A stretch of 64,000 nucleotides of DNA from positions 36,704,001-36,768,000 of the forward strand of contig NC_086106.1 in the NCBI RefSeq assembly GCF_963921235.1, in the 5' to 3' direction. Position 1 is the first letter of the stretch. The number at the start of each line of letters is the position of its first letter. Origin of the DNA: Mobula hypostoma (Eukaryota). The notes beneath the pieces were generated by a model. It was not told the origin of the DNA. It worked only from the letters and a program-made list of their open reading frames with translations, and made no database searches. Below are positions 19,005-63,631 of the stretch, in pieces. Made by a program: the position numbers and the translations under genes.

Positions 19005-19903
19005 TTACGCTATTCTACATATTATATTGAGTGGAAATATCACTGCGTTCTTTAACTGCTTTCTGAAACTACTTTGAGTTACCGCGTATATAAAGGTATT
19101 AGTACAAGAATTCAATAACTGAAGCATACAAGCACTTTCTTGTAAAATAAATTTGGGATCGTTGTAGCCGGCAATTTGATAATTATTCGTAAATCGCTTA
19201 TTACAAAATTGTACAACATTTGTCATCCACAAGAGGATGAAACTACCCGAGATAGTAAACAGTAAAACGATGGATTTCCTCCGGTTGTCGATCTCTGGGT
19301 CACCTTGTTTCTCTCCATTGCCATGCACACGAAGCCTCCTGCGAGCTTTACTAGCTACTAGGATGTACCTGACGGTCAGAGCATTGAACAGGAGTATCAG
19401 GAAGAACGGAGCGAACGGGGTCAAAATACGGTCGAACCAGTCGAATGCTCTCCACAAGGCAGAAGTATAACGGATTTCCTTCTCTTTTCAATACCAGGGA
19501 ACGTCATTAACCAGAAACATTGGTTCGTGCATAAAATACCAGGGTACGCTTTTCAAACATCCCAAAACACTAATCGTTCCTATAACCACAACCGCCGTCT
19601 TCTCGGTGCAGTATTTTGTTTTCAGCTTTTGGCAGCAAATGGCCACAAATCGATCAAAAGTGAAAGCGACTGTCAACCAAACGGAGCTGTCTTTGGACAT
19701 AGAAATTAAAGCAATGGAGAGACTACATACGGGTGTAATGGATAGAAAGCTATTCGGGAAATAAATACCGGGAATCCTATTTAATAAAACAGCCGTGATA
19801 ATAACTAGGAGATCGGTCGCCGCCATTGAGACCAGATACTTCGTTATACACCGGGAGAGACCACATCTTCCTTTGCAAAGGATCACAATCGCCATTAAGT
19901 TAG
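19005..19903 (-). pseudogene. GPR139-like GPCR A1 pseudogene (exon 2 only, in-frame stop)
   Basis: 899 nt, colinear with A3 exon 2. TGA at 19488-19490 replaces the ECL2 Cys codon. Intron homology with A3 stops at ~20340, and no exon 1 or TATA box follows. Confidence 0.85.
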
Positions 19904-22253
19904 CTACAATAAAGAAGGGAAAGACAGAGTAGTATGATGTGGAATAAACACCTCAATGATATAGTGCAATGATAAAAATATTGCTCAAAGATACAAATAT
20001 CAGCGGTGTAGACGCTGGCGAAAGAAATAAAGCGTTTACATTTATAATGATATGCACAACGATTAATAACGTCGATGTTAAATACATCAACCTCGTCAGT
20101 TTTCCATGTTCAATAACCCGCATAGTCAATACTCTTTATTCTACTGCCATTTAAGGAATTCAGAAATAGCGGTGTGGGGTTGCGGGATGGTCGTTTGGAT
20201 TGTGCAGGGAGAGGATAGACAGAAATTTGTTAATGAAATAAAATCAGTCGGATAACATGTGTTTTACAAGTTAATTGCGAGTCACAATTCCTAAACGAAC
20301 TTCCATACGATATAGAATATAAAATTTCATTATTATAACGTAGATTCTGGAAATCTTAAACAGCGCACAAAATGCTGAAGTAACTCAGAAATCAGGCAGC
20401 ATCTAAACAGTCAACGTTAGGGCTGAAACCCTTCGTTAGGACTGAAAAGGAAGGGGTGAGTGAGGAGTACAAGCTGTAGCTGTTAGGTGAGCCCTGCTGA
20501 GAACGCAGATGGATGCGTGGGGAGGCTGGATGAAGTACGAAACTAGGAAGTGATAGGTAGGAAAGGTAAACAGCCGAAGAAGGATTCTGCTATGAGAGGA
20601 TAGTGGACCATGGGCGAAAGGGAAGGAGGATGTGATGGCCAAGTGAGGGGAAGACCAGGGGTGAGAGGGTTAGTAGAACGAGGAACGGTGTTAATATTCC
20701 AAACTGAGCTTTGTCTCATCATGCCAGTAGAGAGGCCATGGTTAGAATGGGAAAGGAAAGTCAAACTGAAATAGGTAGCCACCCTCAGATACTGTGCTTT
20801 GAGGCGGACAGATCAAAAGTGTTCGACGAAGCGATTCTGGAAGGAACATCTTATTTTCTAGTGTACTGAATCTGGTCGCCTCGCAATGTAGAACGGCGAC
20901 TGACCCGGTGGTTTGCTTTGTTGTTGCCATGGGCGAAAGGGAAGGAGGATGTGATGGCAGAATCCTTCTTCGACTTTGTTCTATCTGATCTAGAAGAAAA
21001 GTAAAATCCACGTAAATCGTATGCATAAATCTATGATCAATAACTTTATCTAATTCTGATACTGTTAAAAGTGTCCTGCTCTCTGCGGTGGCATAATTTC
21101 GCATCACTCCATCGTGTTCCCCTTCAGCATACAGTGCTCTGGGAAAATCAGACATCGCCTCTGCCATCTCTCCTCAGGTAACTTATTGGTGAATCTCCTC
21201 TCACCGCTACCATCACTATATCATACTTTCCATGATGTGGTGCTCAGAACATCTCGTAGATCGACATAAATCTGAACAATGATTAATTAGGTTAAACCAT
21301 AATCTCTCTGCTATTATATGGAGAGCCCCGGCTAATGAAAACCAGTATCCCATATTGCTTCTGAGCAAATTCATCGACCTGCCTCTGCCCTCATAATTCA
21401 TGCATGTAAATACGTTTTCTCGTTCGTCATCTCATATTTATCTGGATTAATCTCTATCGGCTGGTTCTCATCTTATTAGCCAAGTCAATGGCATTACTTC
21501 GTACCTTATTTTAGACTTATTTTACCGTAATATGTAAACGCTGCTGGATCGGCACCGCGGAAGTATCGAGTGTGACAATTTAACTAAATTAGAAAGAGCG
21601 CAGTGTTCTTTAAATTAATCATTTCACAAGATGACTGTCAGCAGATATGTAAACCTGAATGGCCAGTGCTTATTCAGACCACGGCACTTCCGATGAACGT
21701 AATGGGAAGGCTGATTTCAGTACCAATACATTGAATTGGGTAAATCATTCGAGTCAATTAGGTTGGTAGCGCAAACGTGGTGGATTGTGGGGAAGAGTTA
21801 ACCAATACCAAATATGGCTTATGTACTTATGCACGGCAAAAGACAAGAAAGGCCCAATTGTGATGTGATTGCTGTACATACATTCGGAGGTGATTGATTT
21901 ATTACTGATGTGAGAAAATGGAGAATAACAGTGGCAGAGAATGAGGTGGGAAATCTTCTTTACTGTTCACCGACAATTCCTGGCAGATCATGGATAGCCT
22001 TGAGCTAATACGAAGGAAGGGGGGGGGGGGGAACCAAGATGAAAATCAATGCTGCACTGAGTGAAGATCCAACATGTGACTGTTCATTGTTTAACTGAAT
22101 TGAGCTATTTAAAGTAAAGCATCCGAAATAACGTTCTAGATTTAATTTTGTTTTCCCTCTGTGAGATTTGCGGAAACTGTTATGTTTTTGTGCTTTGCAC
22201 AGATGCAGCAACATCTAAAGTTACTAATATCGACGTTTCTTTCTTTTAAATAG

Positions 22254-23170
22254 GTAATCTAACGACAATTGTGATCCTGTCCCGCGGAAGATGCGGTCTT
22301 TCTAGATGTATTACTCGATACTTGGTGGGGATGGCAGTGACGGATCTCCTGGTTCTTATCATAGCGGTTATATTAAACCGGATGAGTGTCATTTACCTCC
22401 CGGTATTTTTCCACTCCATCACACCTGTGTGTAGCCTAAAAATAGCTCTGATATACGCCGCTAGAGATAGCTCAGTTTGGTTAACGGTCGCTTTCACCTT
22501 TGATCGCTTTGTAGCGATTTGCTGCCAGAACTGGAAAACAAAACATCGCACGGAGAGAATGGCACGTATGGTTATCGCAGCCGTCTGTGCTGTGAGCTGT
22601 GTGAAAAACATACCATGGTACTTTGTTTATGAACCTTTATATATAATTGACGGTGACCCGTGGTTCTGCAACATTAAATCAAGTTTTTATTCGGAACTAT
22701 TCTGGGCAGCTTTTGATTGGATTGACCGCATTTTAAACCCCTGTGCCCCATTCCTCGTGATGTTGTTACTCAATGCATTGACTGTCAGAAACATTCTCGT
22801 GGCGAACAGAGCCCGCCGGAGACTCCGGGTCCAGAATACTGGAGACAGGCAAAACGATCCGGAGATGGAGAGCCGAAGAAAGTCAATCGTTTTACTCTTC
22901 ACCATCTCTGGAAGTTTTTTGGTATTATGGACACTGTATGTCGTACATTTCTTTCACGTGAGATTTACAATCAATAGTTATTCGACAGACTCGAATCTCA
23001 ACGACCCCTGGTTTATTCTTCAAGAAACAGGAAATATGTCGCAGCTTCTGAGCTGCTGCACAAACACTTGTATTTACGCGGGTACTCAAACGAAATTCAG
23101 AGAGGAATTCATAAATGGTTTGAAATATCCGTTGATTCGAATTAGGAAACAGCTGAGATCACGATCATAG
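22254..23170 (+). pseudogene. GPR139-like GPCR B1: open exon 2, with exon 1 and promoter deleted (probable pseudogene or orphan exon)
   Basis: Intact acceptor and ORF; 14 nt differences from B2 exon 2 by manual alignment. At ~22184 the sequence jumps from the B2-equivalent of ~61743 to ~62647, removing ~0.9 kb that includes the TATA box, exon 1 and donor. Confidence 0.75.
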
Positions 23171-24089
23171 AAGGTGAGTTTGCCTTCGAGATCAGTTCTG
23201 ATTTTTCATGCATCCGCTCACAAATAGGCCACGCGTGTTCCCATCTGTGTATCTATCTCGGATGTAGTCTTTCTGATTCGTGGAACTAACCTTTGCTGAC
23301 AGATATCGACGGTCTGTTACTCATTGTGGCTGGCAAAAACACTCTCATTGCCAATGAAGCGCGCTGGACACCTTGGGTTCATCGTGATGGAGAGACGCAC
23401 GGACCTTTTTCTGAATTCATTTATTTTTTAAAAAAGGAAAACTCTCCCCGGGGCTCACCGAATTGGTCTAGAAATGATAGATTCCCCAGCAGGAGTATGA
23501 TGGATCAATGATGACCATCATAATGTAGGGATCAGCCATTTAGGACCGCAAAAAGCTATATAAAAATAGCCCTGGATTGGTGACACTTCGGAATTCTCTT
23601 TCTAAGAGGACAGTGGTGCCTCGGTTACAAGTACAACAGAATTTTGAATAATAATTAATGCGGGTTTTACGGAGAGTTTTTGGAGGTAAATGGAATAGCT
23701 CTGATGATACCTGATCTCATTAAATAGCAGAGGAGACATGACTGGCCAAATGGTCTCTTGATATATTCAAATATTATGTTAGTAATCCACACTGGGATTG
23801 CAGAGGAAAAATATAATGATCGCTGCTTGTTTTAGAAGTATCAGACCCACATAGTCTGTAATTCGCTCGGAATATTACTCGGAAATAGCAACACGTGCTC
23901 CATGCTCTACTTACGCCACGGACGCTCCACCCTCCACGAACGTTCCCAGCCCAAAACAGGTTGCTATCGTCCAGTAAGGCTTATATCCACCTGTGCTCAA
24001 GTGTTCTGACAGATTGATGATGAACCATATCAACTCCTTCCTGACAACAGATTTAGAACCGCTTCCACAGTTATTTCGAATTGGCAAGA

Positions 24090-28045: not shown

Positions 28046-28049
28046 GACA

Positions 28050-31260: not shown

Positions 31261-32432
31261 ATCCATGTACGTGCTCCTCACCAGTGTTTTGCCTCAGTCC
31301 ACAGTCCGTCTCCCGAGTAAATGCAGTTGCAAAAATAATCCAATGAAGATGTCCCCCATTTCTTTTGGTGCCAAGCATAGATGACTAGGCCGATCGTCAT
31401 GTGAGGCATTTTGGTCCCTTTTGCTAGAAATATATCTGTAGAAGCCCTTGGGATTTTCCTTCACTTTATCTACCAGAACAAACTCAGGCCTTCCTTTACC
31501 CCTCAGTATTTTCTTCTTTGCATTCCGTCTAATCACCCTATTTCCTTTCTGCCTTTACCTGCTACGTAGTTCGCTCTTACACTTAACTGGAGCCTGAATA
31601 TCCCTCGAACACCAAGTCCGAGATTCGTCTTCCCACTAAACAAAGAGAACGATGGAATCCACCATCGTTCTCTTTGTTTAGTGGGAAGACACCCCCACCC
31701 CCCCCCCCCCACACACACACACACCCCACATCCCACCAACACGTTGAAAAAATCCAAAAAACCATACAAATCGCGCAGGCTGAAGAAAAAAAAACGAACG
31801 AAAACACGGAATATGAAATACCAACCCACAAAGTAAAGGACAGAGTCCAGCAGAAGTGGTTCAGTGACTCCAGTTTAATTTAGCGCACTGCCGGTCGTTA
31901 TCTGCAGGCCACCCCGATCAAAATCGCACAAAATAGCAGAATCAAAGTAGAGGAGCGACGAGAAACCAGAAATACATCACAACGTGAACTACAGAGTCCC
32001 CAAACCGCGTCAATAAACCTTGCACAAGACGCAGGACTCTGGCACCATCCCATGGCATCATCGAAGGAGAGAGGGGGGCCATTCGAGCGCATGGATCTTC
32101 CTCCGGGAACACAGAGCGAGAGGGAGAGAGACCGTCACATGTAGATTCTTACCTCCGGCAAAAGCGAGCAGACACCTCCTCCGGCAGAAGCGAACGTGAG
32201 GTTATTGACGGCGCGGAACACCCATTCGCCTTCCGCTCTCATGTCAATTATTTCAAACTTCCTCGACGCTTTAGTCGTCAAATCGGCGACAAGTGGAGTC
32301 AATAATGATCTCTCTCTCTCTGTCTCCAGGCTTCTTTTCCTCTAAACTGCACGCTTCGCTCGAAGCCTCACAGAGAACCCTCGGAAACAGCAAAGGGCCA
32401 GAACGCTCAATCGGCGTCACCTCAGCGACTTA

Positions 32433-35930: not shown

Positions 35931-35934
35931 TTGC

Positions 35935-39066: not shown

Positions 39067-41405
39067 TTACGTTATTTTACATATTATATAAAGTGGATAT
39101 TTCACCGCGTTCTTTAACTGCTTTCTGAAACTACTCTGAGTTACCGCGTATATAAAGGTATTAGTACAAGAATTCAATAACAGCACTTTCTCGTAGAATA
39201 AATTTGGGATCGTTGTAGCCGGCAATTTGATTATTAATCGTAAAACGCTTATAAATAAATTGTACAACGTTTGTCATCCACAAGAGGATGAAAGTACCCG
39301 AGATAGTAAACAGTAAAACGATGGATTTCCTCCGGTTGTCGATCTCTGGGTCACCTTGTTTCTCTCCATTGCCATGCACACGAAGCCTCCTGCGAGCTTT
39401 ACTGGCTACTAGGATGTACCTGACGGTCAGAGCATTGAACAGGAGTATCAGAAAGAACGGAGCGAACGGGGTCAAAATACGGTCGAACCAGTCGAATGCT
39501 CTCCACAAGGCAGAAGTATAACGGATTTCCTTCATTCTGCAAAACCAGGGAACATCACTGATCACAAACATAGGTTCGTGTATAAAATACCAGGGTACGC
39601 TTTTCAAACTTCCGAAAACACTAATCGTTCCTATAACCACAACCGCCGTCTTCTCGATGCAGTATTTTGTTTTCAGCTTTTGGCAGCAAATGGCCACAAA
39701 TCGATCAAAAGTGAAAGCGACTGTCAACCAAACGGAGCTGTCCCTGGTTGAATAAATTAAAGCAATGGTGAGACTACATACGGGTGTAATGGATAGAAAG
39801 CTATTCGGGAAATAAATACCGGGAATCCTATTTAATAAAACAGCCGTGATAATAACTAGGAGGTCGGTCGCCGCCATTGAGAGCAGATACTTCGTTATAC
39901 ACCGGGAGAGACCACATCTTCCTTTGCAAAGGATCACAATCGCCATTAAGTTAGCTACAATAAAAGAGAAAGACAGAATAGTATGATGTGGAATAAGCAC
40001 CTCAATGATATAGTGCAATGATAAATATATTACGCAAAGATACAAATATCGGCGATGTAGATTTTGGCGAACGAAAATAAGCGTTTACATTTATAATGAT
40101 ATGCACAAAGATTAAAAGTCTCGATTCTAAATACTTCAATATGGTCAGTTTTCCATGTTCAATAACCTGTCAGTACTCTTCACCCGTACTGTCATTTAAG
40201 GAATTGAGAAATTGCGGGATGGTCGGCTGGATTGCGGAGGGAGAGGACAGACAGAAATTGATTAATGGAATAAAATCAGTCGGATAAACTGTGCTTTACG
40301 TTAATTGCGAGTCACAATTTCTCAACGAACTTCCATACGATACAAAATATAAAATGTCATTATTATAACTTGAATTTATTAATATAAAACGAAATTTTCG
40401 TTGTTATTTTGGTTAGATTGTCGCCATCATCGATAAATTGACGTATTACTAAACCCGGGCTATCCATAATTGTTACAACCAATCCCGTTGTGATGAATTC
40501 CAAACCAAATCGATGAAAACAATCATTTCGTTTACTTCCGCAGCTGCTATTGTGATAAAGCTACATTTGGATATAACCTTCAAAAATGATGCTGAGAGAC
40601 ATTCAGAAACAAAGCGACAGCGCGCAAGACATTCTTCAAGAAAATATTTTTAAGAGCGTCGCAGATCTTCCCCGTGACTAAGTTGGTTTCCTCCCGGTGC
40701 TCCAATTTTCAAAAACATGCAGGTTAGTGGATTAATGGGGTATTTTAACTTGCCTCTATTCTGTCGCTAAATACCCTTTCCATTTCATTTTCCCACTCAG
40801 ACCCGATGTGCATTGCATATAGTACGACCCAATTCACAGCGCGTCTCTATATATTTAAAAGTGCATTGACATGCTACTTTACATTTCGCCCAATTCGTAA
40901 TCACAAGTAGGAAGAAAAAGATCCCGTGACTGGAATTATCAAAATATTTTCAGAACAATAAGTAAAATTATAAGCATTTCAACATAGCTTAAAGTAGAAA
41001 CTGCTTTGATTGCCAAAATGTTGTTTTTCTTCTCGTCTCTATGTTGTTGGATGAGTTCGGACAGAATCTGCCGGACACTTACGCAGGCAAAATTGCAGAT
41101 ATATTTTAAACGATTATTATGAGGTCTATGAACTGGCCCCTTTCCTTCCCACTGCGTCTTATCTCCGCGTTCACTTCGTGAAAGTAAATCAAGTCAATTA
41201 ATACTGAGGTACAAATAACAATTCGCGTCATCCATAAACGCAGCCACCAAACAACGGAATCTGGAAGGAGCCAAACAATGGACTCTGGAATAAAGAGTAT
41301 TCAGTACGGAGTAATATCCTGCTGAAAAGTTTCACCTGGAATAGCGCAAACTGCAAGGGCAGTGTAATAAACAGCGTACACTGGCCCTCTCGGCGGGGCG
41401 TGCAT
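39067..41405 (-). pseudogene. GPR139-like GPCR A2 (exon 1 41405-41336, exon 2 39954-39067), frameshifted in TM7
   Basis: Both exons and splice sites are present. Exon 2 is 888 nt versus 899 in A1 and A3: an 11-nt deletion at ~39181 gives ...ESAVIEFLY* and loses NTFIY and helix 8. The TATA box is changed to TATATGAC. Confidence 0.82.
40665..40760 (+). mobile_element. V-SINE (HE1-like) remnant in the intron of the A genes (paralog ~57830-57915)
   Basis: cccgtgact...ggtttcctcccggtgctcc...caggttagtggattaat resembles the V-domain. Confidence 0.5.
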
Positions 41406-49023: not shown

Positions 49024-49199
49024 ATTGCTGGAGCCTCGACTAACATCTGAGTGGTAGCACAAGAAAAAGCAGTGATTTCATTTACTTCCAAGGCTGAAGT
49101 GTAAAAAGGCAGCACCTCGCGGCAGTTGTCATAGTTAGATTGTGCCGAATCAGTGAACGGATTCATTTGAAAGGTTGAATAAAGATAGGCAGGGGCAAG

Positions 49200-52100: not shown

Positions 52101-55100
52101 GGATTTACTGGACCGGAAAATTATCAAGGGCTGACAGCAGAGCAGCAATGTCTGGAATTTCTGGGAAGGTTTAATTAGATTCATCCCAACAAAGAAGTAT
52201 TCTAAATGCAGGATGACATAACTGTGGATGCCAAGAGAAGTCAAAGCCAGCATAAAGGCTGAAGAGTGGCATATAATAGAGCAAAAAATACTGTAAATTA
52301 GAGGATTGGGAATCTTTTAAAAACCAACAGTAGGCTACTGAAAATGTCATAAAGATGGAAAAGATGGAATACGAAAATAAGATAGCCAATAACGTTAACA
52401 GAGATTCCAAACGTTTCTGCATATGTATAAAATGTAAAGACGAGGAAAGAGTAGATATTGAACCACTGAAAACTGATGCTGAAGAGGTAGCAATGGGGAA
52501 GTAAGAAATGGCAGCCTAACTGAAAAAGTATTTTTCATCAGTCTCCACTGTGGAAGACACCAGCAGCATGTTGGAAGGTCAGTGGTGTCAGGCGTCAGAG
52601 GTGTGTGAAGTTGCCATTACTAGGGAACTGAAAGGACTGAAGGTAGATAAGTCACCTGGACCGGATGGTCTACATCCTAGTGTTCTGAAAGAGGTAGATG
52701 AAGATATTGTGGAGGCAATAGTAATGATCCTTCAAGAATCAATGGATTCAAGCATGGTTCCAGAGTACTAGAAAAATGCGAGTGTCACTTCACTCCACCC
52801 TTTAGTAAAAGAGAGGAACAGAAGGCCTTTGATAACGTGCCACACGTGAGGCTGCTTGTCAAGTTAAAAGCCCATAGTATTACAGGAAAGATTCTGGTAT
52901 GGATTGCGCATTGGCTGATAGACAGGAGGCAACGAGTGGAAATAAAGGCAGCCTTTTCTGGTTGCCTGCCAATGACCAGTGGTGTTCCACGGGGGTCTTC
53001 GTTGGGACCACTTTTTATGTTTTACGACAATGATTTGGACAACGGAATTGATGGTTTGTGGCCGTGTCTATAGACGATAAAGGATAGGTGGAGGAGTAGG
53101 TAGATTTCAGGAAGCACAGCCGCTGCAGAAGGAATTAGATGGATAAGGAGAATGGACAATTAAATGACAGGTGGAATGCAGCGTCGGTAAATGAGTAATC
53201 ATTCACTTTGGTAGAAGGACTTCTGTACGGCCTTTGACAAGGTTCCACACGGAAGGTTAGTTAGGAAGGTTCAATCGTTAGGCATTAATATCGAAGTAGT
53301 AAAATGGATTCAGCAGTGGCTGGATGAGAGACGCCAGAGAGTAATGGTGGATAACAGTGTGTCAGATTGGAGGACGGTGTCTAATGGTGTGCCTCAGGGA
53401 TCTGTACTGGGTCCAATGTTGTTTGTCATATATATTAATGGTCTGGATGATGGGGTGGTATATTGGATTAGTAAGTATGCAGATGAAACTAAGCTAGGTG
53501 GAGTTGTGGATAATGAAATAGGTTTTCAAAGCTTGCAGAGACATTTAGACCACTAAGAAGAGTCGGCTGAAAGATGGCAGGTGGAGTTTAATACTGATAA
53601 ATGTGAGGTGCTACATTGTGGTAGGACTAATCAATATAGGAAATGCGTGGTAAATGGTAGGGCATTGAAGAATGCAGTAGAACAGAGGGATCTAGGAATA
53701 ATGGTGCATAGTTCCCTGAAGGTGGAATCTCATGTGGATAGGGTGGTGAAGAAAGCTTTTGGTATGCTGGCGTTTATAAATCAGAGCATTGAGTATAGGA
53801 GTTGGGATGTAATGTTGAAATTGTATAAGGCATTGGTAAGGCCAAATTTGGAGTATTATGTTCAGTTCTGGTCACTGAATTATAGGAAAGATGTCAATAA
53901 AATTAAGAGGATACAGAGGAGATTTACTAGAATGTTGCCCGGGTTTCATCTCCTAAGTTACAGAGAAAGGTTAAACGTGTTAGGTCTTTATTTCTTGGAG
54001 CATAGAAGGTTGAGGGGGGACTTGATAGAGGTATTTAAAATTATAAGGGGGGATAGATAGAGTTGACGTGGATAGGCTTTTTCCATTGAGAGTGGGGGAG
54101 ATTCAAACAAGAGGACAGGAGTTGAGCGTTAAAGGGCAAAAGTTTAGGGGTAACATGAGGGGGAACTTCTTTACTCAGAGAGTGGTAGCTGTGTGGAACG
54201 AGCTTCCAGCAGAAGTGGTTGAGGCAGGTTTGATGCTGTAATTTAAAGTTAAATTGGATAGATGTATGGACAGAAAAGGAATGGAGGGTTATGGGCTGAG
54301 TGCAGGTCGGTGGGACTAGGTGAGAGTGTGTGTTCGGCACGGACTAGAAGGGCCGAGATGCCCTGTTTCCGTGCTGTAATTGTTATATGGTTATGGTTAA
54401 GGAATAAAAGTGTGTACTAACTTCTAAATTGAGAGAAACTTCACAAATCTGAAGCGCAAATGGACCTGGGGAGGGGTCCTCGTGCAGGATTCCCTAAAGG
54501 TTAATTTGCAGCTTCATTCAGTGGTGAGAAAGCCAAATATGATGTTAGCATTCATTTCAAAATGACTCGAATATAAAAGCAAGAATGTAATGTTGGAGGC
54601 TTTATAAGGCATAGATGTGGCCTCACTTGGAGTATTGCGAGCAGTTTTGGGCCCCTTATTGAAGAAGCGATGTGCTGACATTGGAAAGCGTTTGAAGGAG
54701 ACTCACGAAAATGATTCCGGGATTGAAAAGCTTATCTGAGAAGCGTTTGATTGCTCTAAACCTCTACTCACTGGAATTCAGCAAAATTGGAGGGCTGGCG
54801 GTGAATCTCTTTGACACCTATCGAACGTCGAAAGGCCTCCATGAAGTGGATGTAGAAAGTATGTATCGTATGATGGGATACTCTAAAAAAAGTACGACAC
54901 ACCCTTCGAATGGAGAGTCGTCTATTAAGAACGGAGATGAGGAGGAATTCCTTTAGAAAGAGAGTGGTGAATCTGCCGAATTCTTTACACCAATCGCAGT
55001 GAAGATCTGATCATTTGGTACAGGCAGAGGTAGATAGATTGTTGATTAGCCTGGGTACAACTGAATGCTGGAGAAGACAGGGGATCGGAGTAGAGAAGCA

Positions 55101-55110
55101 AATGGAAAAA
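49200..55110 (+). mobile_element. Old CR1, duplicate of 12590-17930
   Basis: Colinear with 12590-17930; lacks the Penelope insertion and carries its own CR1 insertion. Confidence 0.8.
53220..54398 (+). mobile_element. 5'-truncated CR1 nested in the old CR1
   Basis: TSD AAGGA at 53215-53219 and 54399-54403; GVPQGSVLGP, YADET and LVRPNLEY motifs; (TATGGT)n tail; empty site at ~17223. Confidence 0.9.
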
Positions 55111-56205
55111 CTATGATGAAATCTGTTTTCACTGTTGACTGTTCCTTGTTGAAATTTGTTGACACCAAAGAGTCTTTTTGTTGATCAGTGCCTTAAAAAG
55201 TCAAAATAAACCCACTGTGATTCAATGTTGTAAAACAATAAAATATTTATATACTTACAGACAGACAGAGACAGAGACAGAGAGAGGGGAGGCGAGAGAG
55301 AGCGAGAGAGGGATAGACAGAGAGAGAGTAGAAAGAGAGTTGCACATGTTTGTGTATATCGAATAAGTTAGGGTTAGAGACAGTGTCATTTTGAAGGCTA
55401 CCAAGCAAGGGGTGAATTTTTATATACTGTAGTAAGCGCAAAGTGATAACGTGAGAATGGAGAATGGAGACGGAAACAGGGCAGTAAGAGATTGTGCAAA
55501 TGTGGAGACTGATTGGGGGCATTGGGATCAAAAGAAGGATGGGTAGCGAAGAGGGAACAGAAGACAGGGATAGATGTACACGATCACGCAGTACAATGTG
55601 AGTACATTTGTTCTGGGAATTTCCCATTCCCGTTTAGACAATTGTCTCTGCGGCCTCCTGCATTGTTACCACAAAACACAATGCAAGATGAGAAGCGCCA
55701 ACTCCGTCTTCAGCCTGGGATCAGCCTTCCAGATTTAATTTTGAATGCTCCCAGCTCACGCATTCTTGTAAAATTCATCTGAATTTGACATTTCTGCCTG
55801 CCATTAATTTAGTTCTGTTATTTCTTTTCCCCAATCCCGTCTGCTAACCAGGAAACACAATGTGCTTCTAACGGATTTACGGACGGATTTACCTGATCCA
55901 AAGTATTCCCTCGGTTCTACTGTACTCTGCAATGTTTTCTGCTGTTTGACGGTAAATTGCTTTCGTTTTCCTTCGGTTCCGCAGAAGAGTTTCGGAACTG
56001 AAATCCTGATCATCTTTTCGCAGATGCCGGTTTACACGCTGAGTGCTTCCAGTATTTTCTGCTTGTATTAAGCCCCAGCCGAACAAACTCAAAATATTTG
56101 AAATTCAGGTGAATAATAACTGCAGTAATAAAGTTTTTGGCCTTCGAATAGGTGCACAGATGCTTCTGATGAAAAGAATATTCATTCAGATTTAGACTTT
56201 AATTA

Positions 56206-57104
56206 TTACGTTATTTTACATATTATATGAAGCAGATATTTCACCGCGTTCTTTAACTGCTTTCTGAAACTTTTTTGAGTTACCGCGTATATAAAGGTAT
56301 TAGTACAAGAATTCAATAACTGAAGCATAATAGCACTTTCTTGTAGAATAAATTTGGGATCGTTGTAGCCGACAATTTGATAATTATTCGTCAAACGCTT
56401 ATAACAAAATTGTACAACATTTGTCATCCACAGGAGGATGAAACTACCCGAGATAGCGAACAGTAAAACGATGGATTTCCTCCGGTTGTCGATCTCTGGG
56501 TCATCCTCTTTCTCTCCATTGCCATGCACACGAAGCCTCCTGCGAGCTTTACTGGCTACTAGGATGTACCTGACGGTCAGAGCATTGAACAGGAGTATCA
56601 GGAAGAACGGAGTGAACGGGGTCAAAATACGGTCGAACCAGTCGAATGCTCTCCACAAGGCAGAAGTATAACGGATTTCCTTCACACTGCAAAACCAGGG
56701 AACATCATTGATCACAAACATAGGTTCGTGTATAAAATACCAGGGTACGCTTTTCAAACATCCGAAAACACTAATCGTTCCTATAACCACAACCGCCGTC
56801 TTCTCGGTGCAGTATTTTGTTTTCAGCTTTTGGCAGCAAATGGCCACAAATCGATCAAAAGTGAAAGCGACTGTCAACCAAACGGAGCTGTCTTTGGACA
56901 TAGAAATTAAAGCAATGGAGAGACTGCATACGGGTGTAATGGACAGAAAGCTATTCGGGAAATAAATACCAGGAATCCTATTTAATAAAACAGCCGTGAT
57001 AATAACTAGGAGATCCGTCGCCGCCATTGAGACCAGATACTTCGTTATACACCGGGAGAGACCACATCTTCCTTTGCAAAGGATCACAATCGCCATTAAG
57101 TTAG
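56206..57104 (-). CDS. Exon 2 of intact GPR139/GPR142-like class A GPCR A3 (322 aa spliced)
   Basis: Acceptor ...ttttttgtAG|CT AAC TTA ATG; uninterrupted ORF. 7TM motifs: AN in TM1, MAATDLL in TM2, SVWLTVAFTFDRFVAICC in TM3, ECL2 Cys (PWFC), LNSCTNTFIY in TM7. These resemble GPR139/142 motifs. Confidence 0.92.
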
Positions 57105-58445
57105 CTACAAAAAAAGGAAAGACAGAGTAGTATTATGTGGAATAAGCACCTCAATGATATAGTGCAATGATAAAAATATTGCGCAAAGATACAAATATCA
57201 GCGGTGTAGATTTCAGCGAACGAAAAGAAGCGTTTACATTTATAATGATATGCACAAAGATTAATACTCTCGATGTTAAATACATCAGCACGTTCAGTTT
57301 TCTATGTTCAATAACCCGCATAGTCAGTATTTTTTACCCCTACTGCCATTTAAGGAATTGAGAAATAGCGGGGTGGGGGTGGCGAGATGCTCGGTTGGAT
57401 TGTGGAGGGAGAGGACAGACAGTAATTAATAAATGGAATAAAAACAGTCGGATAACATGTGCTTTAGAAGTTAATTGCGAGTCACAATTTCTAAACGAAC
57501 TTCCATAGATGTACAATATAAAATGTTATTACAGTATTGCTACGTAGGTTTATTGATATAAACCGAAATTTCGTTCTTAGTTTGGTGAGATTGGCGCCAT
57601 CATCGATAAATTCACGTATTAATAACACCCGGGCTCTCTATATTACCGTTCTGATTAAATCCAAGCCAAATGGATGAAAACAAACATTTCCGTTACTTCC
57701 GCAGCTGTTATTGTGGTAAAACTACATATGGAAATAACCTTTAAAAATGATGCTAAGAGACATTCAGAAACATAGCGACAGACGCGCAAGACATTCTTCA
57801 AGAAAATATTTTTAAGTGTGTCGCAGATCCTCGCCGTGACCAAGCTGATTTCCTCCCGGTGCTCCAATTTTCAAAGACAAGCAGGTTAGTGGGTCAATGG
57901 GGTATTTTAAAATGCATCTATTCTGTCGCTAAGTACCCTTTCCATTTCTTTTCCCACTCACACCCGATGTGCACAGCGTGTCTTTATATTTTGAAAGAGT
58001 ACATTGATTTGTTGCTTTTAGTTTCGCCCAATCCGTAATCACAAACAGGAAGAAAAGGATTCTGCGACTCGAATTATCAAAATCTTTCCAGAACAATAAG
58101 AAAAATTGTAAGTATTTCAACATAGCTTATAGTAGAAACTGTTCTGGTTGCCAAAGTGTTCTTCATCTCGTCTTGATGTTGTTAGATGAGTTCACACAGA
58201 ATCTACTGGTCATTGCGCAGGTAAAATTGCAGATATATTTTAAATGATTATTATGAGATCTGTGAACGGGCCACTTTCCTTCTCTCTGCGTGTTACCTCC
58301 GCGTTCACTTCGTGAAAGTAAATCAGGTCAATCAATACTGAGGTACAAATTACATTTCGCGTCTTCCATAAACCCAGCCACCAAACAACGGAATCTCGAT
58401 TAAACAGGCTACAGTAAGGAATAATATCCTGCTGAACAGTTTCAC

Positions 58446-58515
58446 CTGGAATAGCGCATACTGCAAGGGCAGTGTAATAAACAGCGTACACTGGCCCTCT
58501 CGGCGGGGCGTGCAT
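58446..58515 (-). CDS. Exon 1 of intact GPR139/GPR142-like GPCR A3 (MHAPPRGPVYAVYYTALAVCAIP + 1 nt)
   Basis: ATG at 58515; 70 nt ending CCA G|GTGAAA (phase-1 donor); hydrophobic TM1 start; TATATAAA ~64 nt upstream; joins in frame to exon 2 (G|CT = Ala, then N-L-M-A-I-V). Confidence 0.88.
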
Positions 58516-58578
58516 CTGTGCGAGCGAGTCTGTTTGGAATCGCACATACAATCAATCTCATTGACAGTCACACGATCC

Positions 58579-58586
58579 TTTATATA
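58579..58586 (-). promoter_or_regulatory. TATA box of GPCR A3
   Basis: TATATAAAGGA on the minus strand, ~64 nt upstream of the ATG; same motif as in B2. Confidence 0.7.
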
Positions 58587-59864
58587 TCCAAGTATAATGG
58601 ACGAGTCCTCCTCCCTACCCCAATTCCTGAGAGGTACAACTAGAAAATAGCTCAATTGATCCACTAAATTCTTCCAACCATCTGAGTACATTTTTGTTAT
58701 TTACATTCATTGAAGAACCATACTATAGCAATTAATTTGAGTTTCATTTTCCATGAAGAAAAATGGATCAAACCGAACAACATGCTCATTTAAAAGTATA
58801 TTCACAAATTTCTAACTATCTCTCTATCTGTATGTATATGTAGTACGTCCTCGTTATCCTTACCAAAATTTATCAATTTGCATTTAAAGTGCATTGAATT
58901 TCACTCATCACACCATGCCGTCTACATTCACTTCTCCTCACTCCTCAGCACACTTTCAACTTTTGCCACACCGGCATAGTTTGAAGTGTTTCTGTCCACA
59001 TTCATGTTCTAAAGTCATCTCTGGGAAAGCAATACTCTACCATTGATCGCTGGGAAACATCGCTTGACATTTCTCATATTTCTGGGCAACATTTGCTTTG
59101 TTGCTGTAAAGTGTCACTGGCAGGGTTTATGTTGACCAGACCTGAGGTATTTCATGCTTTGCTGGAGCTTCTGCATGACGGTAACTAGATTTGATAGTCA
59201 TTATCTGATGTTGCCTGTTTCATCTGAGCACATGGTAGCGAAGAACACTCCATATGACGCAACCGACTTCTATCTCAGACTCGAATCCAATTCTGCATTT
59301 TCCCACCCCAATCTATTGGCGTATAACTTTTTCGAAAATCTTCTGCAGGCTTCCCAATCACGCAACTTCGAAGGAATGCAAATCTGTTGTCTATCTGGTC
59401 TAATTAGTTCTAACCAGTGTTTCAAAACCAGCATATAGCAGTTTCAGTTGATTATGCGTTATGTTTTATGTCATGTTATAGACAATGTTTACATCAAAAA
59501 ATTAATATTTCATGGCGTGGTAATTAGTTCATATTGCAAAAATGTATTATCCATGCGGGAGGAAACAAAGGCAACAGTGTGAAGTGCCTTCGCGGAGTGT
59601 GCTGCCATGTTGCGGCCGCCTACCAGCACAGAACAAATGATATGTCTGTCCAGATATACGGGGTTTACGTGAACAAAGATACCTGGAGCACAACTGCAGT
59701 ATTTTCTATATATCTAACTCAGTTTCTCTTGAGGTTAGAAACATCAGGTCGTCTTTTAACGAAAAGGAGCTTTGGTAGAGTCGCTACAGAGATAATCTTT
59801 CCACTTGTGGGGATAAGCCTGATCAAAGGGCAGTAATCAGCAAGAAATTAACACAAGGAGTGGT

Positions 59865-60040
59865 TTCAAACGTTTCCTGTGGACCACCTCTGGGGGTCCA
59901 AGACGCCGACTTCTTCAAAGAAGGGATCCGTATGCTCCACAATCGTTGGACTAAGTGCGTAAATGTAGGAAAAATAAATGTGCTAGGTTTTCTAAAATTG
60001 ACTACGTCTACCTTAGGCCACGAACTTATCAATCTCCCCT
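59865..60040 (+). mobile_element. Mariner transposon 3' remnant
   Basis: FFKEGIRMLHNRWTKCVNVG resembles a mariner C-terminus; TIR-like gccacgaacttatcaatc follows. Confidence 0.6.
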
Positions 60041-62048
60041 TTTTTTTGTCGCCACTAACGTAATTGATTCTGCAGATGCTGGAAATAGAAACTAAAATTG
60101 CGTCACACTTTGGCCACCTTCCTTAAATACCGTAGGGAACATGCCATTCACGTGACAAAACATCACCCCACGGTCATAAGACAATTACATCATCCCACTG
60201 TGCCGTGACCAAACTGTGGACATGTAACAATACCACAAGGATGCAGACTACCTGGACGTTAACACCTAGATAAGGTTTTAATCTTCCAAACTGAGCTCTG
60301 TCTCATCATGCCAGTAGAGGAAGCCATGTTCAGAATAGGAAAGGAAAGTGAAGCTGAAATAGGTAGCCACCCGCAGATACTCTGTTCAGCGGCGGACAGA
60401 TCAAAAGTGTTCGATGAAGCGATTCTGGAAGGAACATTTTATTTTATAATGTACTGAATCTGGTCGCCTTGCAATGTAGAACGGCGATTGACCCGGTGTC
60501 TTGCTTTGTTGTTGCACGGACACTTCATTCTATCCTATCCTGAGGAAAAGTAAAATCCGTGTAAATCCTGTACCTAAATCTATGTTCAATTACTTTATCT
60601 AATTCTGATACTGTTAAAAGTGTCCTGCTCTCTACGGTGGCATAATTTCGCATCACTCCATCGTGTTCCCCTTCAGCATACAGTGCTGTGGGAACATCAG
60701 ACATCGCCTCTACCGTCTCTCCTCGGGTAATGTATTGGTGAATCTCCTCTCACCGTTACTATCACTATATTGTACTTCCTATGATGCGGTGCTAAGAACA
60801 TCTCGTACATCTACACAAATCTGAACAATGTTTAATTAAGTTGAAACATAATCTCTCTGCTATTATATGGAGAGCTCCGACTAATGAGAGCCAGTATCCC
60901 ATATTGCTTCTGAGCAAATTCATCGATCTGCTGTGCCCTCAATAACATGCATGTAAATATGTTTTCCGGTTCGTCATCTCATATTTATCTGGATTAATCC
61001 CCATCGGCCAGTTCTCATCCATTTGGCCAAGACAATGGTATCACTTCGTACCTTCTTTTAAAGTTATTTTACCGTAATACTTAAACGCTGCTAGATCGGC
61101 ACAGCGAAAGTATCGAGTGTTCCCAATTAATTAATTTAGAAAGAGGGCAGTGTTCTTCAAATTAATCATTTCCAAGGATCACTGAACGCGGACGGGTAAA
61201 TCTGAATGGGCAGTGCTTATTCAGGCCACGGCACTTTCAATGAACGTAATGGGAAGCGTGATTTTCGGACCAATGCATTGAGTTGGGTAAATTATTCGAG
61301 TCAATTAGGTTGGTGCCATAAAAATGGTTGATTGTGGGGAACTTTTGACCAATAGAAACATGGCATATGTACTTGCGCACGACAAAAGACGAGAAAGGAT
61401 TCTCGTGATAGTAGCCAGTCCAACTGGGAGATGATTGCTGTACCTACATTCGGAGGTGATTGATTTATTAGTGATGTGAGAAAATGGAGAATAACTGGCA
61501 GAGAATGAGGTGCGGAACTTCCTTTAATGTTAACGGTCAACTCTTGGAAGGTCATGGGTAACCTTTAGCTAATACGTAGGAAGAGGGAATCCAAGATGAA
61601 GATCAATGCCGCACAGAGCCAATGTCAAATCATGTGACTGTTCATTGTTTAATTCAATTGATCAATTTAAAGTAAAGCATCCGAAATAACTTTCTAGGTT
61701 TAAATTTGTTTTCCCTCTGTGAGATTTGCGTAAAGTATTATGTGCATGAGAAACAAAGGAAAAGATCGCTGTCTGTTGCTTTACAAAAGAACTATTCCTT
61801 TTACTTTTTGGTGGAAGAGTTAGACTTTAAGAATAATTTTGCATAATATGTTGCGAATTATACCGTTGATGCAGATTAACGAGCCATGAAGTTATAAAAG
61901 AGCGGCGACAAGACAACGAGAAAGTAAAGGACAGCACCTGGTGTCGACTGTACCAGTTGAAGACGAAACTCCAAGATTAATTTATCATACTAATTTGGAT
62001 TGAAGTGTAAATTTGGAACTGTCGTGCCCGCGTGTGTGTGCGCGCGCA

Positions 62049-62051
<3 letters not shown>

Positions 62052-62099
<48 letters not shown>
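62052..62099. repeat. (CA)n microsatellite upstream of B2
   Basis: Direct reading. Confidence 0.95.
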
Positions 62100-62101
<2 letters not shown>

Positions 62102-62361
62102 GTGTGCATATGTTTGCGAGTGTATGGATTGATGTGAAAGTTCGAATAATTTTACAAACGTGGTTATCGGACCAATAATGTGATTGTATATGTTCGCAGT
62201 TGATACGCAATAGCAAAATTACTTATAGTTTAGGGAAAACTTAAACTCTGAGGGTGTTAATTTAATTGTTTCATTATTGCAACTCGGATGAGTGATGACA
62301 TAATCTATGTTTGTTTCTGGGGCAGTGCGATTTAATTGTCCTGCTATCAGCTTCTGTCATT

Positions 62362-62369
62362 TATATAAA
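62362..62369 (+). promoter_or_regulatory. TATA box of GPCR B2
   Basis: TATATAAAGGA, ~72 nt upstream of the ATG at 62442. Confidence 0.7.
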
Positions 62370-62441
62370 GGAATCCTTTTCTGCATCACGGACATAGAGT
62401 TGCCTGTTGATCAAAAAATTCACCCTCGGAACTAGGAGACC

Positions 62442-62511
62442 ATGCATGGGCAAACAAAGGGCCTCGCGTATGCGATTTTCTACCCACTTCTGGCAGTTCT
62501 AGGTGTTCCAG
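62442..62511 (+). CDS. Exon 1 of intact GPR139/GPR142-like GPCR B2 (MHGQTKGLAYAIFYPLLAVLGVP + 1 nt)
   Basis: gaccATG at 62442; 70 nt ending CCA G|GTAAAT; TATATAAA at 62362; a 203-nt intron leads to the in-frame acceptor at 62713-62714. Confidence 0.9.
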
Positions 62512-62714
62512 GTAAATGATACATTGCGCAGACAGTTCTGCGCTCCTCTTGAATTTGGCAGAAAATATCTGTACGTTCCAGTCAGCTGCTTCCTATGCTT
62601 TACATGAGCCTTCCACATCTGTTGAAGGTTCAGGAGCTTCGTGTATTTTTCTGTTTTGTACAGATGCAGCAACATCTAAAATTAGTAATATCGACGTTTC
62701 TTTCTTTTAAATAG

Positions 62715-63631
62715 GTAATCTAACGACAATTGTGATCCTGTCCCGCGGAAGATGCAGTCTTTCTAGATGTATTACTCGATACTTGGTGGGGATGGCAGTG
62801 ACGGATCTCCTGGTTCTTATCATAGCGGTTATATTAAACCGGATGAGTGTCATTTACCTCCCGGTATTTTTCCTCTCCACCACTCCGGTGTGTAGCCTAA
62901 AAATAGCTCTGATATACGCCGCTAGAGATAGCTCAGTTTGGTTAACGGTCGCTTTCACCTTTGATCGCTTTGTAGCGATTTGTTGCCAGAACTGGAAAAC
63001 AAAATATTGCACGGAGAGAATGGCACGTATGGTTATCGCAGCCGTCTGTGCTGTGAGCTGTGTGAAAAACATACCATGGTACTTTGTTTATGAACCTTTA
63101 TATATAATTGACGGTGACCCGTGGTTCTGCAACATTAAATCAAGTTTTTATTCGGAACTATTCTGGGCAGCTTTTGATTGGATTGACCGCATTTTAAACC
63201 CCTGTGCCCCATTCCTCGTGATGTTGTTACTCAATGCATTGACTGTCAGAAACATTCTCGTGGCGAACAGAGCCCGCCGGAGACTCCGGGTCCAGAATAC
63301 TGGAGACAGGCAAAACGATCCGGAGATGGAAAGCCGAAGAAAGTCAATCGTTTTACTCTTCACCATCTCTGGAAGTTTTTTGGTATTATGGACCCTGTAT
63401 GTTGTACATTTCTTTCACGTGAGATTTACAAACAATAGTTATTCGACAGGCTCGAATCTCAACGACCCCTGGTTTATTCTTCAAGAAACAGGAAATATGT
63501 CGCAGCTTCTGAGCTGCTGCACAAACACTTGTATTTACGCGGGTACTCAAACGAAATTCAGAGAGGAATTCATAAATGGTTTGAAATATCCGTTGATTCG
63601 AATTAGGAAACAGGTGAGATCACGATCATAG
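62715..63631 (+). CDS. Exon 2 of intact GPR139/GPR142-like class A GPCR B2 (328 aa spliced)
   Basis: Acceptor tttcttttaaatAG|GT AAT CTA (G|GT = Gly, GNLTTIV); open to TAG at 63629-63631; motifs AVTDLL, TFDRFVAICC, PWFC, SCCTNTCIY. Confidence 0.92.

What the first reader, a model, noticed from the sequence alone, without database searches (positions are those of the whole stretch)
19005..63631. Expanded GPR139/142-like receptor array behaving like a chemosensory repertoire
Seen: five 7TM loci in two subtypes within 45 kb, two intact and three damaged in different ways, all with very short N-termini, a compact two-exon layout and DRF in place of DRY. Established: mammalian GPR139 and GPR142 are single-copy receptors activated by aromatic amino acids (Trp, Phe), and cartilaginous fishes have few canonical ORs. 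Inference: this is a lineage-specific receptor family under birth-and-death evolution. It is a candidate uncharacterised amino-acid or peptide-sensing chemoreceptor (or immune-sensing) system rather than a GPR139 ortholog.
Basis: partly seen in the sequence, partly recalled or inferred. Interest (0 to 1): 0.85.

Follow-up and report, generated by a model that had tools for sequence, protein, structure and literature searches.

The report
Expanded orphan receptor gene array in a ray
This stretch of devil-ray chromosome holds five copies (two intact, three broken) of a cartilaginous-fish receptor family that databases label "GPR139"; the family runs to roughly a hundred genes per genome, is only a distant cousin of GPR139, and nothing yet shows what it senses or where it is expressed.

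Summary
The window matches Mobula hypostoma RefSeq models. It carries five two-exon class A GPCR loci of two subtypes, A on the minus strand and B on the plus strand, about 62% identical.

- **Intact:** A3 and B2.
- **A1:** a TGA at the ECL2 cysteine codon, and exon 1 lost.
- **A2:** an 11-bp frameshift in TM7.
- **B1:** exon 1 lost in a 902-bp deletion.

All carry DRF and an N-terminus of about 7 residues. RefSeq already names them "probable GPR139".

They are not GPR139 orthologs (about 22% identity). GPR139 is still the nearest solved receptor: 73 bits against 52 for the next with a family profile. The family has 113 clusters at 50% identity, spans sharks, rays and the chimaera, and has a salamander sister group. 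Subtypes A and B each have roughly 80%-identical orthologs in sharks, so they are ancient, not lineage-specific. The intracellular face is near-invariant and pocket positions are more variable. The carboxylate-anchoring R6.51 of GPR139 is absent.

A chemosensory role is untested: five RNA-like runs showed no transcripts, and I found no paper on the family. The scan noted about 26 similar clusters elsewhere in this genome.

The parts
19005..19903 (-). A1 exon 2 (subtype A pseudogene). It has an in-frame TGA at 19490-19488 replacing the conserved ECL2 Cys codon. No exon 1 remains upstream.
20332..20687 (.). Replacement or deletion scar between A1 and B1. These 355 bp stand where the A3/B2 unit has about 2.7 kb (57531-60274), which includes the subtype-A exon 1 and promoter.
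   Evidence: no exon-1-like ORF in 19950-22255
22254..23170 (+). B1 exon 2. The ORF is open and 98.5% identical in DNA to B2, but the canonical exon 1 is gone: a 902-bp deletion has its junction at 22185. This exon equals the exon-2 part of RefSeq XP_062915850.1, whose first exon (21659-21701) is a TM1-less cryptic exon.
39067..39954 (-). A2 exon 2 (subtype A pseudogene). An 11-bp deletion at about 39181 shifts the frame within TM7, so the NxxIY motif and helix 8 are lost.
41336..41405 (-). A2 exon 1, intact (ATG, 23 codons plus 1 nt, donor GTGAAA).
56206..57104 (-). A3 exon 2, intact (TM1 end to stop).
58446..58515 (-). A3 exon 1 (ATG to the phase-1 donor GTGAAA). Spliced to exon 2 it gives 322 aa, identical to XP_062915852.1.
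58576..58586 (-). TATA box TATATAAAGGA, 71 nt upstream of the A3 ATG.
62362..62372 (+). The same 11-mer TATA box TATATAAAGGA, 80 nt upstream of the B2 ATG.
62442..62511 (+). B2 exon 1 (23 codons plus 1 nt, donor GTAAAT).
62715..63631 (+). B2 exon 2, intact. Spliced to exon 1 it gives 328 aa. RefSeq XP_062915853.1 is identical up to residue 322, then splices at 63611/63612 to a repeat-derived exon outside the window.

Best explanation
This is a segment of a tandem array from a large cartilaginous-fish family of compact (about 322-328 aa), two-exon class A GPCRs.

The repeated unit is a head-to-head A(-)/B(+) gene pair. Each gene has its own TATA-box promoter immediately upstream of a tiny first exon. 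The unit was duplicated segmentally. The copies then decayed in different ways (nonsense mutation, frameshift, exon-1 deletions), leaving one working pair, A3 and B2.

The proteins are 7TM receptors with these features:
- a near-invariant intracellular face, so they probably share one transducer;
- a conserved TM3-ECL2 disulfide and a predicted ECL2 beta-hairpin;
- a more variable extracellular half and ligand pocket.

Most likely this is a ligand-diversified receptor repertoire signalling through a common G protein.

Phylogenetically the family is a distant relative of GPR139. Its sister is a small salamander group. It lies alongside other non-mammalian 'GPR139-like' orphans and is not an ortholog of GPR139 or GPR142.

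Shown: gene structures, lesions, family size and range, nearest relatives, and the variability pattern. Inferred: that A3 and B2 are functional, that ligands differ between paralogs, and any tissue or sensory role.
For: - **Loci and lesions:**
- **Identity to RefSeq M. hypostoma models:**
- **Segmental duplication:**. Exons are 94-98.5% identical against 83-92% in introns and flanks.
- **Family size and range:** 2203 and 2402 hits at 90% clustering, with the top 120 all chondrichthyan. There are 113 clusters at 50% identity with E<=1e-30, followed by a sharp drop to <=32% identity. Callorhinchus has a member.
- **Copy number in relatives:** DNA runs of relatives lay 350-380 contigs on 2.5 kb.
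- **Tree:** the family is monophyletic (SH-aLRT 96), the salamander group is its sister (100), and subtypes A and B each group with Narcine, Heptranchias and Heterodontus orthologs.
- **GPR139 affinity:** family profile 73 bits against 52 for the next solved receptor; broader profile 126 against 94; top Swiss-Prot structural hit.
- **Variability:** extracellular TM halves have entropy 1.49 against 0.91 bits for intracellular halves. Generic pocket positions score 1.46 against 1.17 for the TM mean, permutation p=0.011.
- **Structure:** a confident 7TM model, pLDDT 89.5, with an ECL2 hairpin.
- **Promoters:** a shared TATA 11-mer upstream of A3 and B2.
Against: - No transcript evidence. Five RNA-like runs show no coverage of A3 or B2 exons. 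Their tissues and species are coded and unknown, so this is weak.
- The family's Logan-derived proteins look like unspliced genomic calls.
- Pairwise dN/dS is 0.38-0.68 and involves pseudogenes, so it says little.
- Synonymous divergence is 2-3 times lower than flank divergence. This points to gene conversion, which blurs any dating of the duplications.
- The variability pattern (variable outside, constant inside) is generic for GPCR subfamilies.
- The tree used the quick method and contained no GPR139 or GPR142 sequence.
Confidence: 0.8

Rival explanations
1. The family is an exteroceptive chemosensory repertoire (olfactory, gustatory or solitary chemosensory cell) that supplements the small OR, TAAR and V1R sets of cartilaginous fishes.
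For: - Order 10^2 genes per genome in tandem arrays with pseudogenes (scan notes).
- Compact OR-like size with minimal termini.
- Pocket positions more variable than the TM average.
- Absent from the RNA-like runs examined, which fits restricted expression.
- Not covered by the chemoreceptor surveys found.
Against: - No expression data at all.
- Subtypes are conserved at about 80% between sharks and rays. That is slower than typical fast-turnover chemoreceptor clades.
- No OR-type Pfam match and no N-terminal glycosylation sequon.
- The catshark sensory atlas found no GPCR among the top 50 olfactory-enriched genes (PMC11979771).
Confidence: 0.3
2. The family consists of receptors for endogenous ligands (peptides or metabolites) acting in brain, gut or endocrine tissue. 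In this reading it is an expanded neuropeptide-type system.
For: - The nearest known receptors are GPR139 and peptide receptors: GPR15, PrRPR, TRHR, NTSR1, GHSR, GALR2.
- The model shows an ECL2 beta-hairpin, which in my own knowledge is typical of peptide-binding class A receptors.
- Subtypes are ancient and strongly conserved.
Against: - Roughly a hundred paralogs with many pseudogenes is unusual for endogenous-ligand receptors.
- No co-expanded ligand family is known.
- No transcripts were seen in the runs examined.
Confidence: 0.3
3. The family is an immune-cell sensor repertoire, comparable to expansions of chemokine, FPR or MRGPR type.
For: - GPR15 and chemokine receptors are among the nearer solved relatives.
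- Unverified first-stage notes place other clusters of this family next to TCR V arrays and Ig-like genes.
Against: - Adjacency is not function, and I did not check those notes.
- This window holds no immune genes, only LINE and Tc1 remnants.
- No expression data.
Confidence: 0.12
4. These are simply GPR139 (or GPR142) orthologs or recent duplicates of it, as the RefSeq name implies, activated by aromatic amino acids.
For: - RefSeq and UniRef names.
- GPR139 is the top hit among solved structures.
- TM7 lacks the NPxxY proline in both.
- Both genes have two exons (PMC7318219).
Against: - Only about 22% identity and 37.5 or 29 bits to human GPR139, whereas true orthologs are 70% identical between human and zebrafish (PMC7318219).
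- Closer relatives exist that are themselves not GPR139.
- Amphioxus 'GPR139' scores 101 bits to human GPR139, against 37.5 bits for A3 and 29 for B2.
- The equivalents of R244, H187 and E108 are not conserved.
Confidence: 0.03

Closest known systems
GPR139 (human/rodent; PDB 7VUG, 9M42)
   Same: - Class A 7TM, and the best-scoring solved receptor with single sequences and with profiles.
- Top Swiss-Prot structural hit.
- TM7 motif lacks the proline (NFFLY in GPR139, TNTxIY here).
- W6.48 is conserved, and the N7.38 equivalent mostly so (A3 itself has Ile there).
- Two-exon gene (PMC7318219).
   Different: - About 22% identity.
- Multigene family rather than single copy.
- DRF instead of DRY.
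- No P6.50.
- The equivalents of E108(3x32), H187(5x43) and R244(6x51) are I, D and Y/N.
- N-terminus of about 7 residues.
- Whether the intron position is homologous was not tested.
Non-mammalian 'GPR139-like' orphans: the conserved single-copy group represented by Latimeria XP_005988539.1 (probably one of the GPR210A/B sets of PMC6504862), and the salamander group XP_069092602.1
   Same: - Nearest sequence relatives outside Chondrichthyes: 31-32% identity, 115-131 bits.
- All have GPR139 as best solved hit at only 53-70 bits.
- The salamander group is sister to the family.
   Different: - These groups show one protein cluster per species among the hits I saw, and that cluster is conserved from sharks to squamates.
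- The chondrichthyan family is expanded to order 10^2 genes per genome.
- Sharks carry both the single-copy gene (66% to Latimeria) and the expanded family.
Vertebrate chemoreceptor GPCR families (OR, TAAR, V1R/ORA, T2R)
   Same: - Compact, about 320 aa.
- Tandem arrays with a high pseudogene fraction.
- Variable pocket and constant intracellular face.
   Different: - No 7tm_4 or other chemoreceptor Pfam match above threshold.
- The coding region is split by an intron in TM1.
- No N-terminal glycosylation site.
- Old, slowly evolving subtypes.
- No expression evidence.

Membership tests
Rhodopsin-like (class A) GPCR, Pfam PF00001 | Significant 7tm_1 match and a seven-helix fold | tested here: met
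   E 3e-19 to 4e-11. AF2 model has pLDDT 89.5 with 7 TM helices plus H8. TM-scores are 0.7-0.8 to GPCR structures.
GPR139/GPR142 (orthology) | High identity to GPR139 (human-zebrafish orthologs are 70% identical; PMC7318219) | tested here: not met
   20-24% identity in structural alignments, and 37.5 and 29.1 bits to human GPR139.
GPR139/GPR142 (orthology) | Single-copy, conserved gene | tested here: not met
   Five loci in 45 kb. 113 clusters at 50% identity and more than 2000 clusters at 90%.
GPR139/GPR142 (orthology) | Agonist pocket residues F109 3x33, H187 5x43, W241 6x48, R244 6x51, N271 7x38, E108 3x32 (PMC7318219) | tested here: not met
   HMM alignment: W6.48 is kept, N7.38 mostly kept, and 3x33 is aromatic (Y) in the consensus but S in A3. 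E108 aligns to I, H187 to D, and R244 to Y (N in A3).
GPR139/GPR142 (wider relationship) | GPR139 is the nearest characterised receptor by a clear margin | tested here: met
   Profile scores are 73.2 against 51.7 bits and 126 against 94 bits. By structure alone the margin is negligible.
GPR139/GPR142 (wider relationship) | Placement inside the GPR139+GPR142 clade in a phylogeny | not testable with these tools
   No GPR139 or GPR142 sequence could be brought into a tree. Indirect evidence: amphioxus 'GPR139' scores 101 bits to human GPR139, and the family branches with non-GPR139 vertebrate orphans.
GPR139/GPR142 (wider relationship) | Shared intron position (two-exon gene) | tested here: inconclusive
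   Two coding exons here, with a phase-1 intron before N1.50. GPR139 has two exons (PMC7318219), but I could not check its intron position.
Chemosensory receptor repertoire (functional class) | Large tandem arrays with birth-and-death turnover | tested here: met
   Three of five copies are disabled by different lesions, within a segmental duplication. Unverified scan notes report many other clusters in this genome.
Chemosensory receptor repertoire (functional class) | Expression in chemosensory cells | tested here: inconclusive
   No coverage of A3 or B2 exons in five RNA-like runs of unknown tissue and coded species. No paper found.
Olfactory receptor family (Pfam 7tm_4) | 7tm_4 match and an intronless coding region | tested here: not met
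   Only 7tm_1, plus a sub-threshold Srx match. The coding region is split in TM1.

The most novel reading that the evidence does not exclude
This chondrichthyan-wide, roughly hundred-gene class A family, mislabelled GPR139 in databases, is the main unrecognised chemosensory (olfactory or other exteroceptive) receptor repertoire of sharks and rays. It would fill the gap left by their very small OR, TAAR and V1R sets.
Probability: 0.25. Interest if true: 0.9.

Novelty: new variant of a known kind. Interest (0 to 1): 0.58.

Why it matters
Surveys of canonical chemoreceptor families report that cartilaginous fishes have few ORs, TAARs and V1Rs (for example PMC6368271). This family has been left out of such surveys, probably because automatic annotation files it under GPR139, GPR15-like, TRHR-like, vasopressin V2-like or capa receptor-like names.

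If it proves to be sensory, the picture of how sharks and rays smell or taste would change. If it binds endogenous or immune ligands, it would be an unusually large vertebrate expansion of a peptide-type receptor lineage. Either way it defines a testable orphan family with a clear outgroup: a salamander sister group and single-copy GPR210-type genes. It also warns that the 'GPR139' label in chondrichthyan annotations does not imply aromatic amino-acid sensing.

For this window alone, the content is an ordinary slice of that family.

Tried and rejected
1. **Expression.** Two run searches and two read-laying runs. Only DNA runs of relatives hold the sequence. Five RNA-like runs gave nothing on the exons, and their tissues and species are coded, so no conclusion is possible.
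2. **Synteny in the RefSeq assembly.** The look-up of encoding contigs returned no DNA because the file is too large.
3. **Tree with GPR139 and GPR142.** No tool yielded their sequences as usable ids. I used bit scores to PDB GPR139 and an amphioxus root instead.
4. **First structure model.** A 26-row alignment gave a poor model (pLDDT 61). It was replaced by a 115-row alignment.
5. **Fold searches.** They do not discriminate GPR139 from GHSR, GALR2, GPR15 or NTSR1.
6. **Literature.** GPR139+shark, GPR139-like, 'G-protein coupled receptor 139'+elasmobranch, chondrichthyan GPCR expansion and catshark olfactory GPCR all found nothing on this family. Only PMC6504862 names related non-mammalian groups (GPR210A/B), and it included no cartilaginous fish.
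7. **Logan-derived family proteins.** I checked them for spliced N-termini as a proxy for transcripts. They start in intron-derived sequence, so they are genomic calls.
8. **Retrogene origin.** Rejected, because the intron is retained in all copies that still have exon 1.
9. **OR-type promoter motifs.** Not convincingly present. Only a shared TATA box was found.


Full report
**What is there.**

ORF listing and Pfam scans show five rhodopsin-type 7TM bodies at 19005-19895(-), 22271-23170(+), 39161-40045(-), 56206-57096(-) and 62732-63631(+). Their 7tm_1 E-values run from 3e-19 to 4e-11. tblastn with full-length homologs finds only these five bodies plus two short upstream hits that encode residues 1-23.

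I call the minus-strand copies A1, A2 and A3, and the plus-strand copies B1 and B2. A and B are about 62% identical in protein.

**Gene structure.**

Each complete gene has two coding exons.
- Exon 1 carries a short leader, the ATG and 70 coding nucleotides. It encodes the 7-residue N-terminus and most of TM1.
- A phase-1 GT..AG intron follows. Exon 2 starts two bases before the codon for N1.50.
- A3: exon 1 at 58515-58446, donor GTGAAA, acceptor ttgtag, exon 2 at 57104-56206.
- A2: exon 1 at 41405-41336, exon 2 at 39954-39067.
- B2: exon 1 at 62442-62511, donor GTAAAT, a 203-bp intron, exon 2 at 62715-63631.

My spliced A3 product is identical to RefSeq XP_062915852.1 of Mobula hypostoma. B1 exon 2 is 100% identical to XP_062915850.1, and B2 matches XP_062915853.1 up to residue 322. 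The window is therefore M. hypostoma, and the genes are already annotated as 'probable G-protein coupled receptor 139'.

Two of those RefSeq models look wrong in detail.
- The B1 model uses a cryptic first exon at 21659-21701 that lacks TM1.
- The B2 model splices past the natural stop into a repeat-derived exon.

**Damage.**

- **A1** has TGC>TGA at 19490-19488, the conserved ECL2 cysteine. It has also lost exon 1: about 2.7 kb of the A3/B2 unit (57531-60274) is replaced by 355 bp.
- **A2** has an 11-bp deletion at about 39181 that shifts the frame inside TM7.
- **B1** has an open exon 2, but a clean 902-bp deletion (equivalent to 61744-62645) removed exon 1 and its promoter. It also carries Y121H and C122R at near-invariant ICL2 positions.
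- **A3 and B2** are intact.

DRF occurs in 98 of 120 homologs.

**Array history.**

The unit is a head-to-head A(-)/B(+) pair. Segments 55000-57531, 60274-61743 and 62646-64000 match 17823-20332, 20687-22185 and 22185-23542. Segment 55260-58914 matches 38143-41802.

Exons are more alike than their surroundings: 98.5% against 83-93% for B1/B2, 95.3% against 88% for A1/A3, and 94.1% against 83-84% for A2/A3. Synonymous divergence (0.03-0.09) is 2-3 times lower than flank divergence. That suggests gene conversion between exon 2 copies on top of past purifying selection, so pairwise dN/dS (0.38-0.68) says little.

A3 and B2 share an identical TATA 11-mer 71 and 80 nt upstream of their ATGs.

The DNA between the loci is mostly LINE reverse-transcriptase and esterase ORFs and other repeats.

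**The family.**

Word-indexed searches give 2203 hits for A3 and 2402 for B2 at 90% clustering. All named hits among the top 120 of each come from sharks and rays: Mobula, Narcine, Rhinoraja, Leucoraja, Amblyraja, Hemitrygon, Hypanus, Pristis, Heptranchias, Heterodontus, Pristiophorus, Scyliorhinus, Chiloscyllium, Stegostoma, Rhincodon and Mustelus. At least 42 distinct clusters come from Heterodontus alone.

The exhaustive representative search finds 113 clusters at 50% identity with E<=1e-30, then a sharp fall to <=32% identity. Divergent members include Callorhinchus milii. They carry assorted automatic names, such as vasopressin V2-like, capa receptor-like and tachykinin-like.

DNA runs of related species lay 350-380 contigs at 90-95% identity on a 2.5-kb stretch, with a large depth spike over the TM3/DRF region. 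First-stage notes of this scan list about 26 further 'GPR139-like' findings elsewhere in this genome. I did not verify those.

Across roughly 20 annotated genomes, the 90%-cluster counts imply on the order of a hundred genes per genome. This is an estimate, not a count.

**Relationship to GPR139.**

- Single sequences hit human GPR139 best, but weakly: 37.5 and 29.1 bits, against 36 for GPR15 and 25 for GPR21.
- A family profile separates GPR139 clearly, 73 bits against 52. A broader profile gives 126 against 94 for NTSR1.
- By structure, rat GPR139 is first in Swiss-Prot, but GHSR, GALR2, GPR15, TRHR and NMUR2 are practically tied. GPR142 is not in the top 30. The PDB ranking is equally flat.

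The nearest sequences outside Chondrichthyes are:
- a salamander group (32% identity, 131 bits);
- a Latimeria protein (31% identity, 115 bits);
- teleost, bichir and amphioxus proteins.

None of the four vertebrate proteins I searched against PDB (salamander, Latimeria, anchovy, bichir) is a true GPR139. They score only 53-70 bits to human GPR139, against 101 bits for amphioxus 'GPR139'.

The Latimeria protein belongs to a conserved group found in sharks (66% identity), sturgeon, amphibians, teleosts, turtles and squamates, with one protein cluster per species among the hits. This is probably one of the GPR210A/B sets that PMC6504862 listed under 'GPR139; GPR142'.

In a quick ML tree the chondrichthyan family is monophyletic (SH-aLRT 96) and the salamander group is its sister (100). 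The single-copy group and a bichir/anchovy group are the next branches. A3 and B2 each sit in clades with Narcine, Heptranchias and Heterodontus orthologs at 78-82% identity.

The lineage therefore predates the split between cartilaginous and bony fishes. The expansion is chondrichthyan, and subtypes A and B predate the shark-ray split.

**Protein features.**

The 115-row alignment gives a confident model, pLDDT 89.5 and pTM 0.86. It has 7 TM helices, helix 8, an ECL2 beta-hairpin, and almost no N- or C-terminal tail.

Invariant or near-invariant positions include N1.50, D2.50, the C3.25-ECL2 Cys pair, R3.50, P5.50, W6.48, N7.49 and Y7.53.

Unusual features:
- DRF in place of DRY;
- no P6.50 (LLWMT);
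- TNTxIY in place of NPxxY. GPR139 also lacks this proline (NFFLY).

Of the GPR139 agonist-pocket residues listed in PMC7318219, W6.48 and mostly N7.38 are kept, and 3x33 is aromatic in the consensus. E108, H187 and R244 align to I, D and Y/N. Nothing therefore supports aromatic amino-acid ligands.

Across 167 full-length members, extracellular TM halves are more variable than intracellular halves (entropy 1.49 against 0.91 bits). Generic orthosteric positions exceed the TM mean (1.46 against 1.17, permutation p=0.011). ICL1, the DRF/ICL2 region and the end of ICL3 are nearly invariant. This fits diversified ligands with a common transducer, but it is a generic GPCR pattern.

**Function.**

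I obtained no expression evidence.
- The run index found only DNA holders. Five RNA-like runs gave no coverage of A3 exon 2, A3 exon 1 or B2. They covered only a SINE-like repeat at about 59880-60040. Tissues and species are coded, so this is only weakly consistent with restricted expression.
- Logan-derived proteins of the family begin in intron-derived sequence, so they are genomic calls.
- No paper in the library describes the family.
- The catshark sensory atlas reports no GPCR among its top 50 olfactory-enriched genes (PMC11979771).

I therefore commit only to 'a ligand-diversified class A receptor repertoire with shared coupling' (0.8). For the biological role I split the odds: exteroceptive chemosensation about 0.3, endogenous peptide or metabolite ligands about 0.3, immune about 0.1, and the remainder unknown.

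**Verdict.**

- Right: not an ortholog, a birth-and-death array, and GPR139 as the nearest known receptor.
- To correct: the family is ancient and chondrichthyan-wide with slowly evolving subtypes. It lies outside GPR139 proper on present evidence. There is no basis for amino-acid ligands, and the sensory or immune role is untested.

The gene models already exist in RefSeq. As far as I could find, the family as such is undescribed.

Noticed in passing
window 59880-60040: A repeat of about 150 nt (SINE-like) is the only part of 58300-63700 covered in four RNA-like runs. It is covered by hundreds of contigs at very high summed depth, so it is an abundant transcribed interspersed repeat.
   Followed up: no
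window 35106-37734 (-), 45351-49062 (-), 2102-3139 (+), 8843-10604 (+), 53581-54060 (+): LINE remnants and one near-complete LINE. At 35106-37734 a GDSL-esterase-type ORF (35106-35915) lies next to an RVT_1 reverse-transcriptase ORF of 555 aa (36067-37734). They fill the space between the receptor units.
   Followed up: partly
window 4702-5172 (-): Tc1/mariner-type transposase N-terminal fragment (HTH_Tnp_Tc3_2 and Sleeping Beauty HTH domains).
   Followed up: partly
window 21659-21701 and 63611-63612: RefSeq models look imperfect. XP_062915850.1 (B1) starts at a cryptic TM1-less exon. XP_062915853.1 (B2) splices at AAACAG|GTGAGA, past the natural stop, into a repeat-derived C-terminal exon outside the window. 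Copies of that repeat lie at 32069-32281 and elsewhere.
   Followed up: partly
window 22254-23170 vs 62715-63631; 19005-19903 and 39067-39954 vs 56206-57104: Exon 2 copies are 94-98.5% identical while introns and flanks are 83-92%. Synonymous divergence is 2-3 times below flank divergence. This suggests gene conversion confined to the coding exon, even into disabled copies.
   Followed up: partly
proteins P0291, P0340-P0457: A conserved 'GPR139-like' orphan, one protein cluster per species among the hits, is present from sharks to squamates and absent from the mammal and bird hits. In some annotations it is fused to TMEM183A models. It probably equals a GPR210 set of PMC6504862.
   Followed up: partly
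window 58516-62441: A3 and B2 are transcribed divergently from a 3.9-kb shared intergenic region. Each has the identical TATATAAAGGA box. TAATTG-like homeodomain-type motifs occur upstream of both but were not evaluated statistically.
   Followed up: partly
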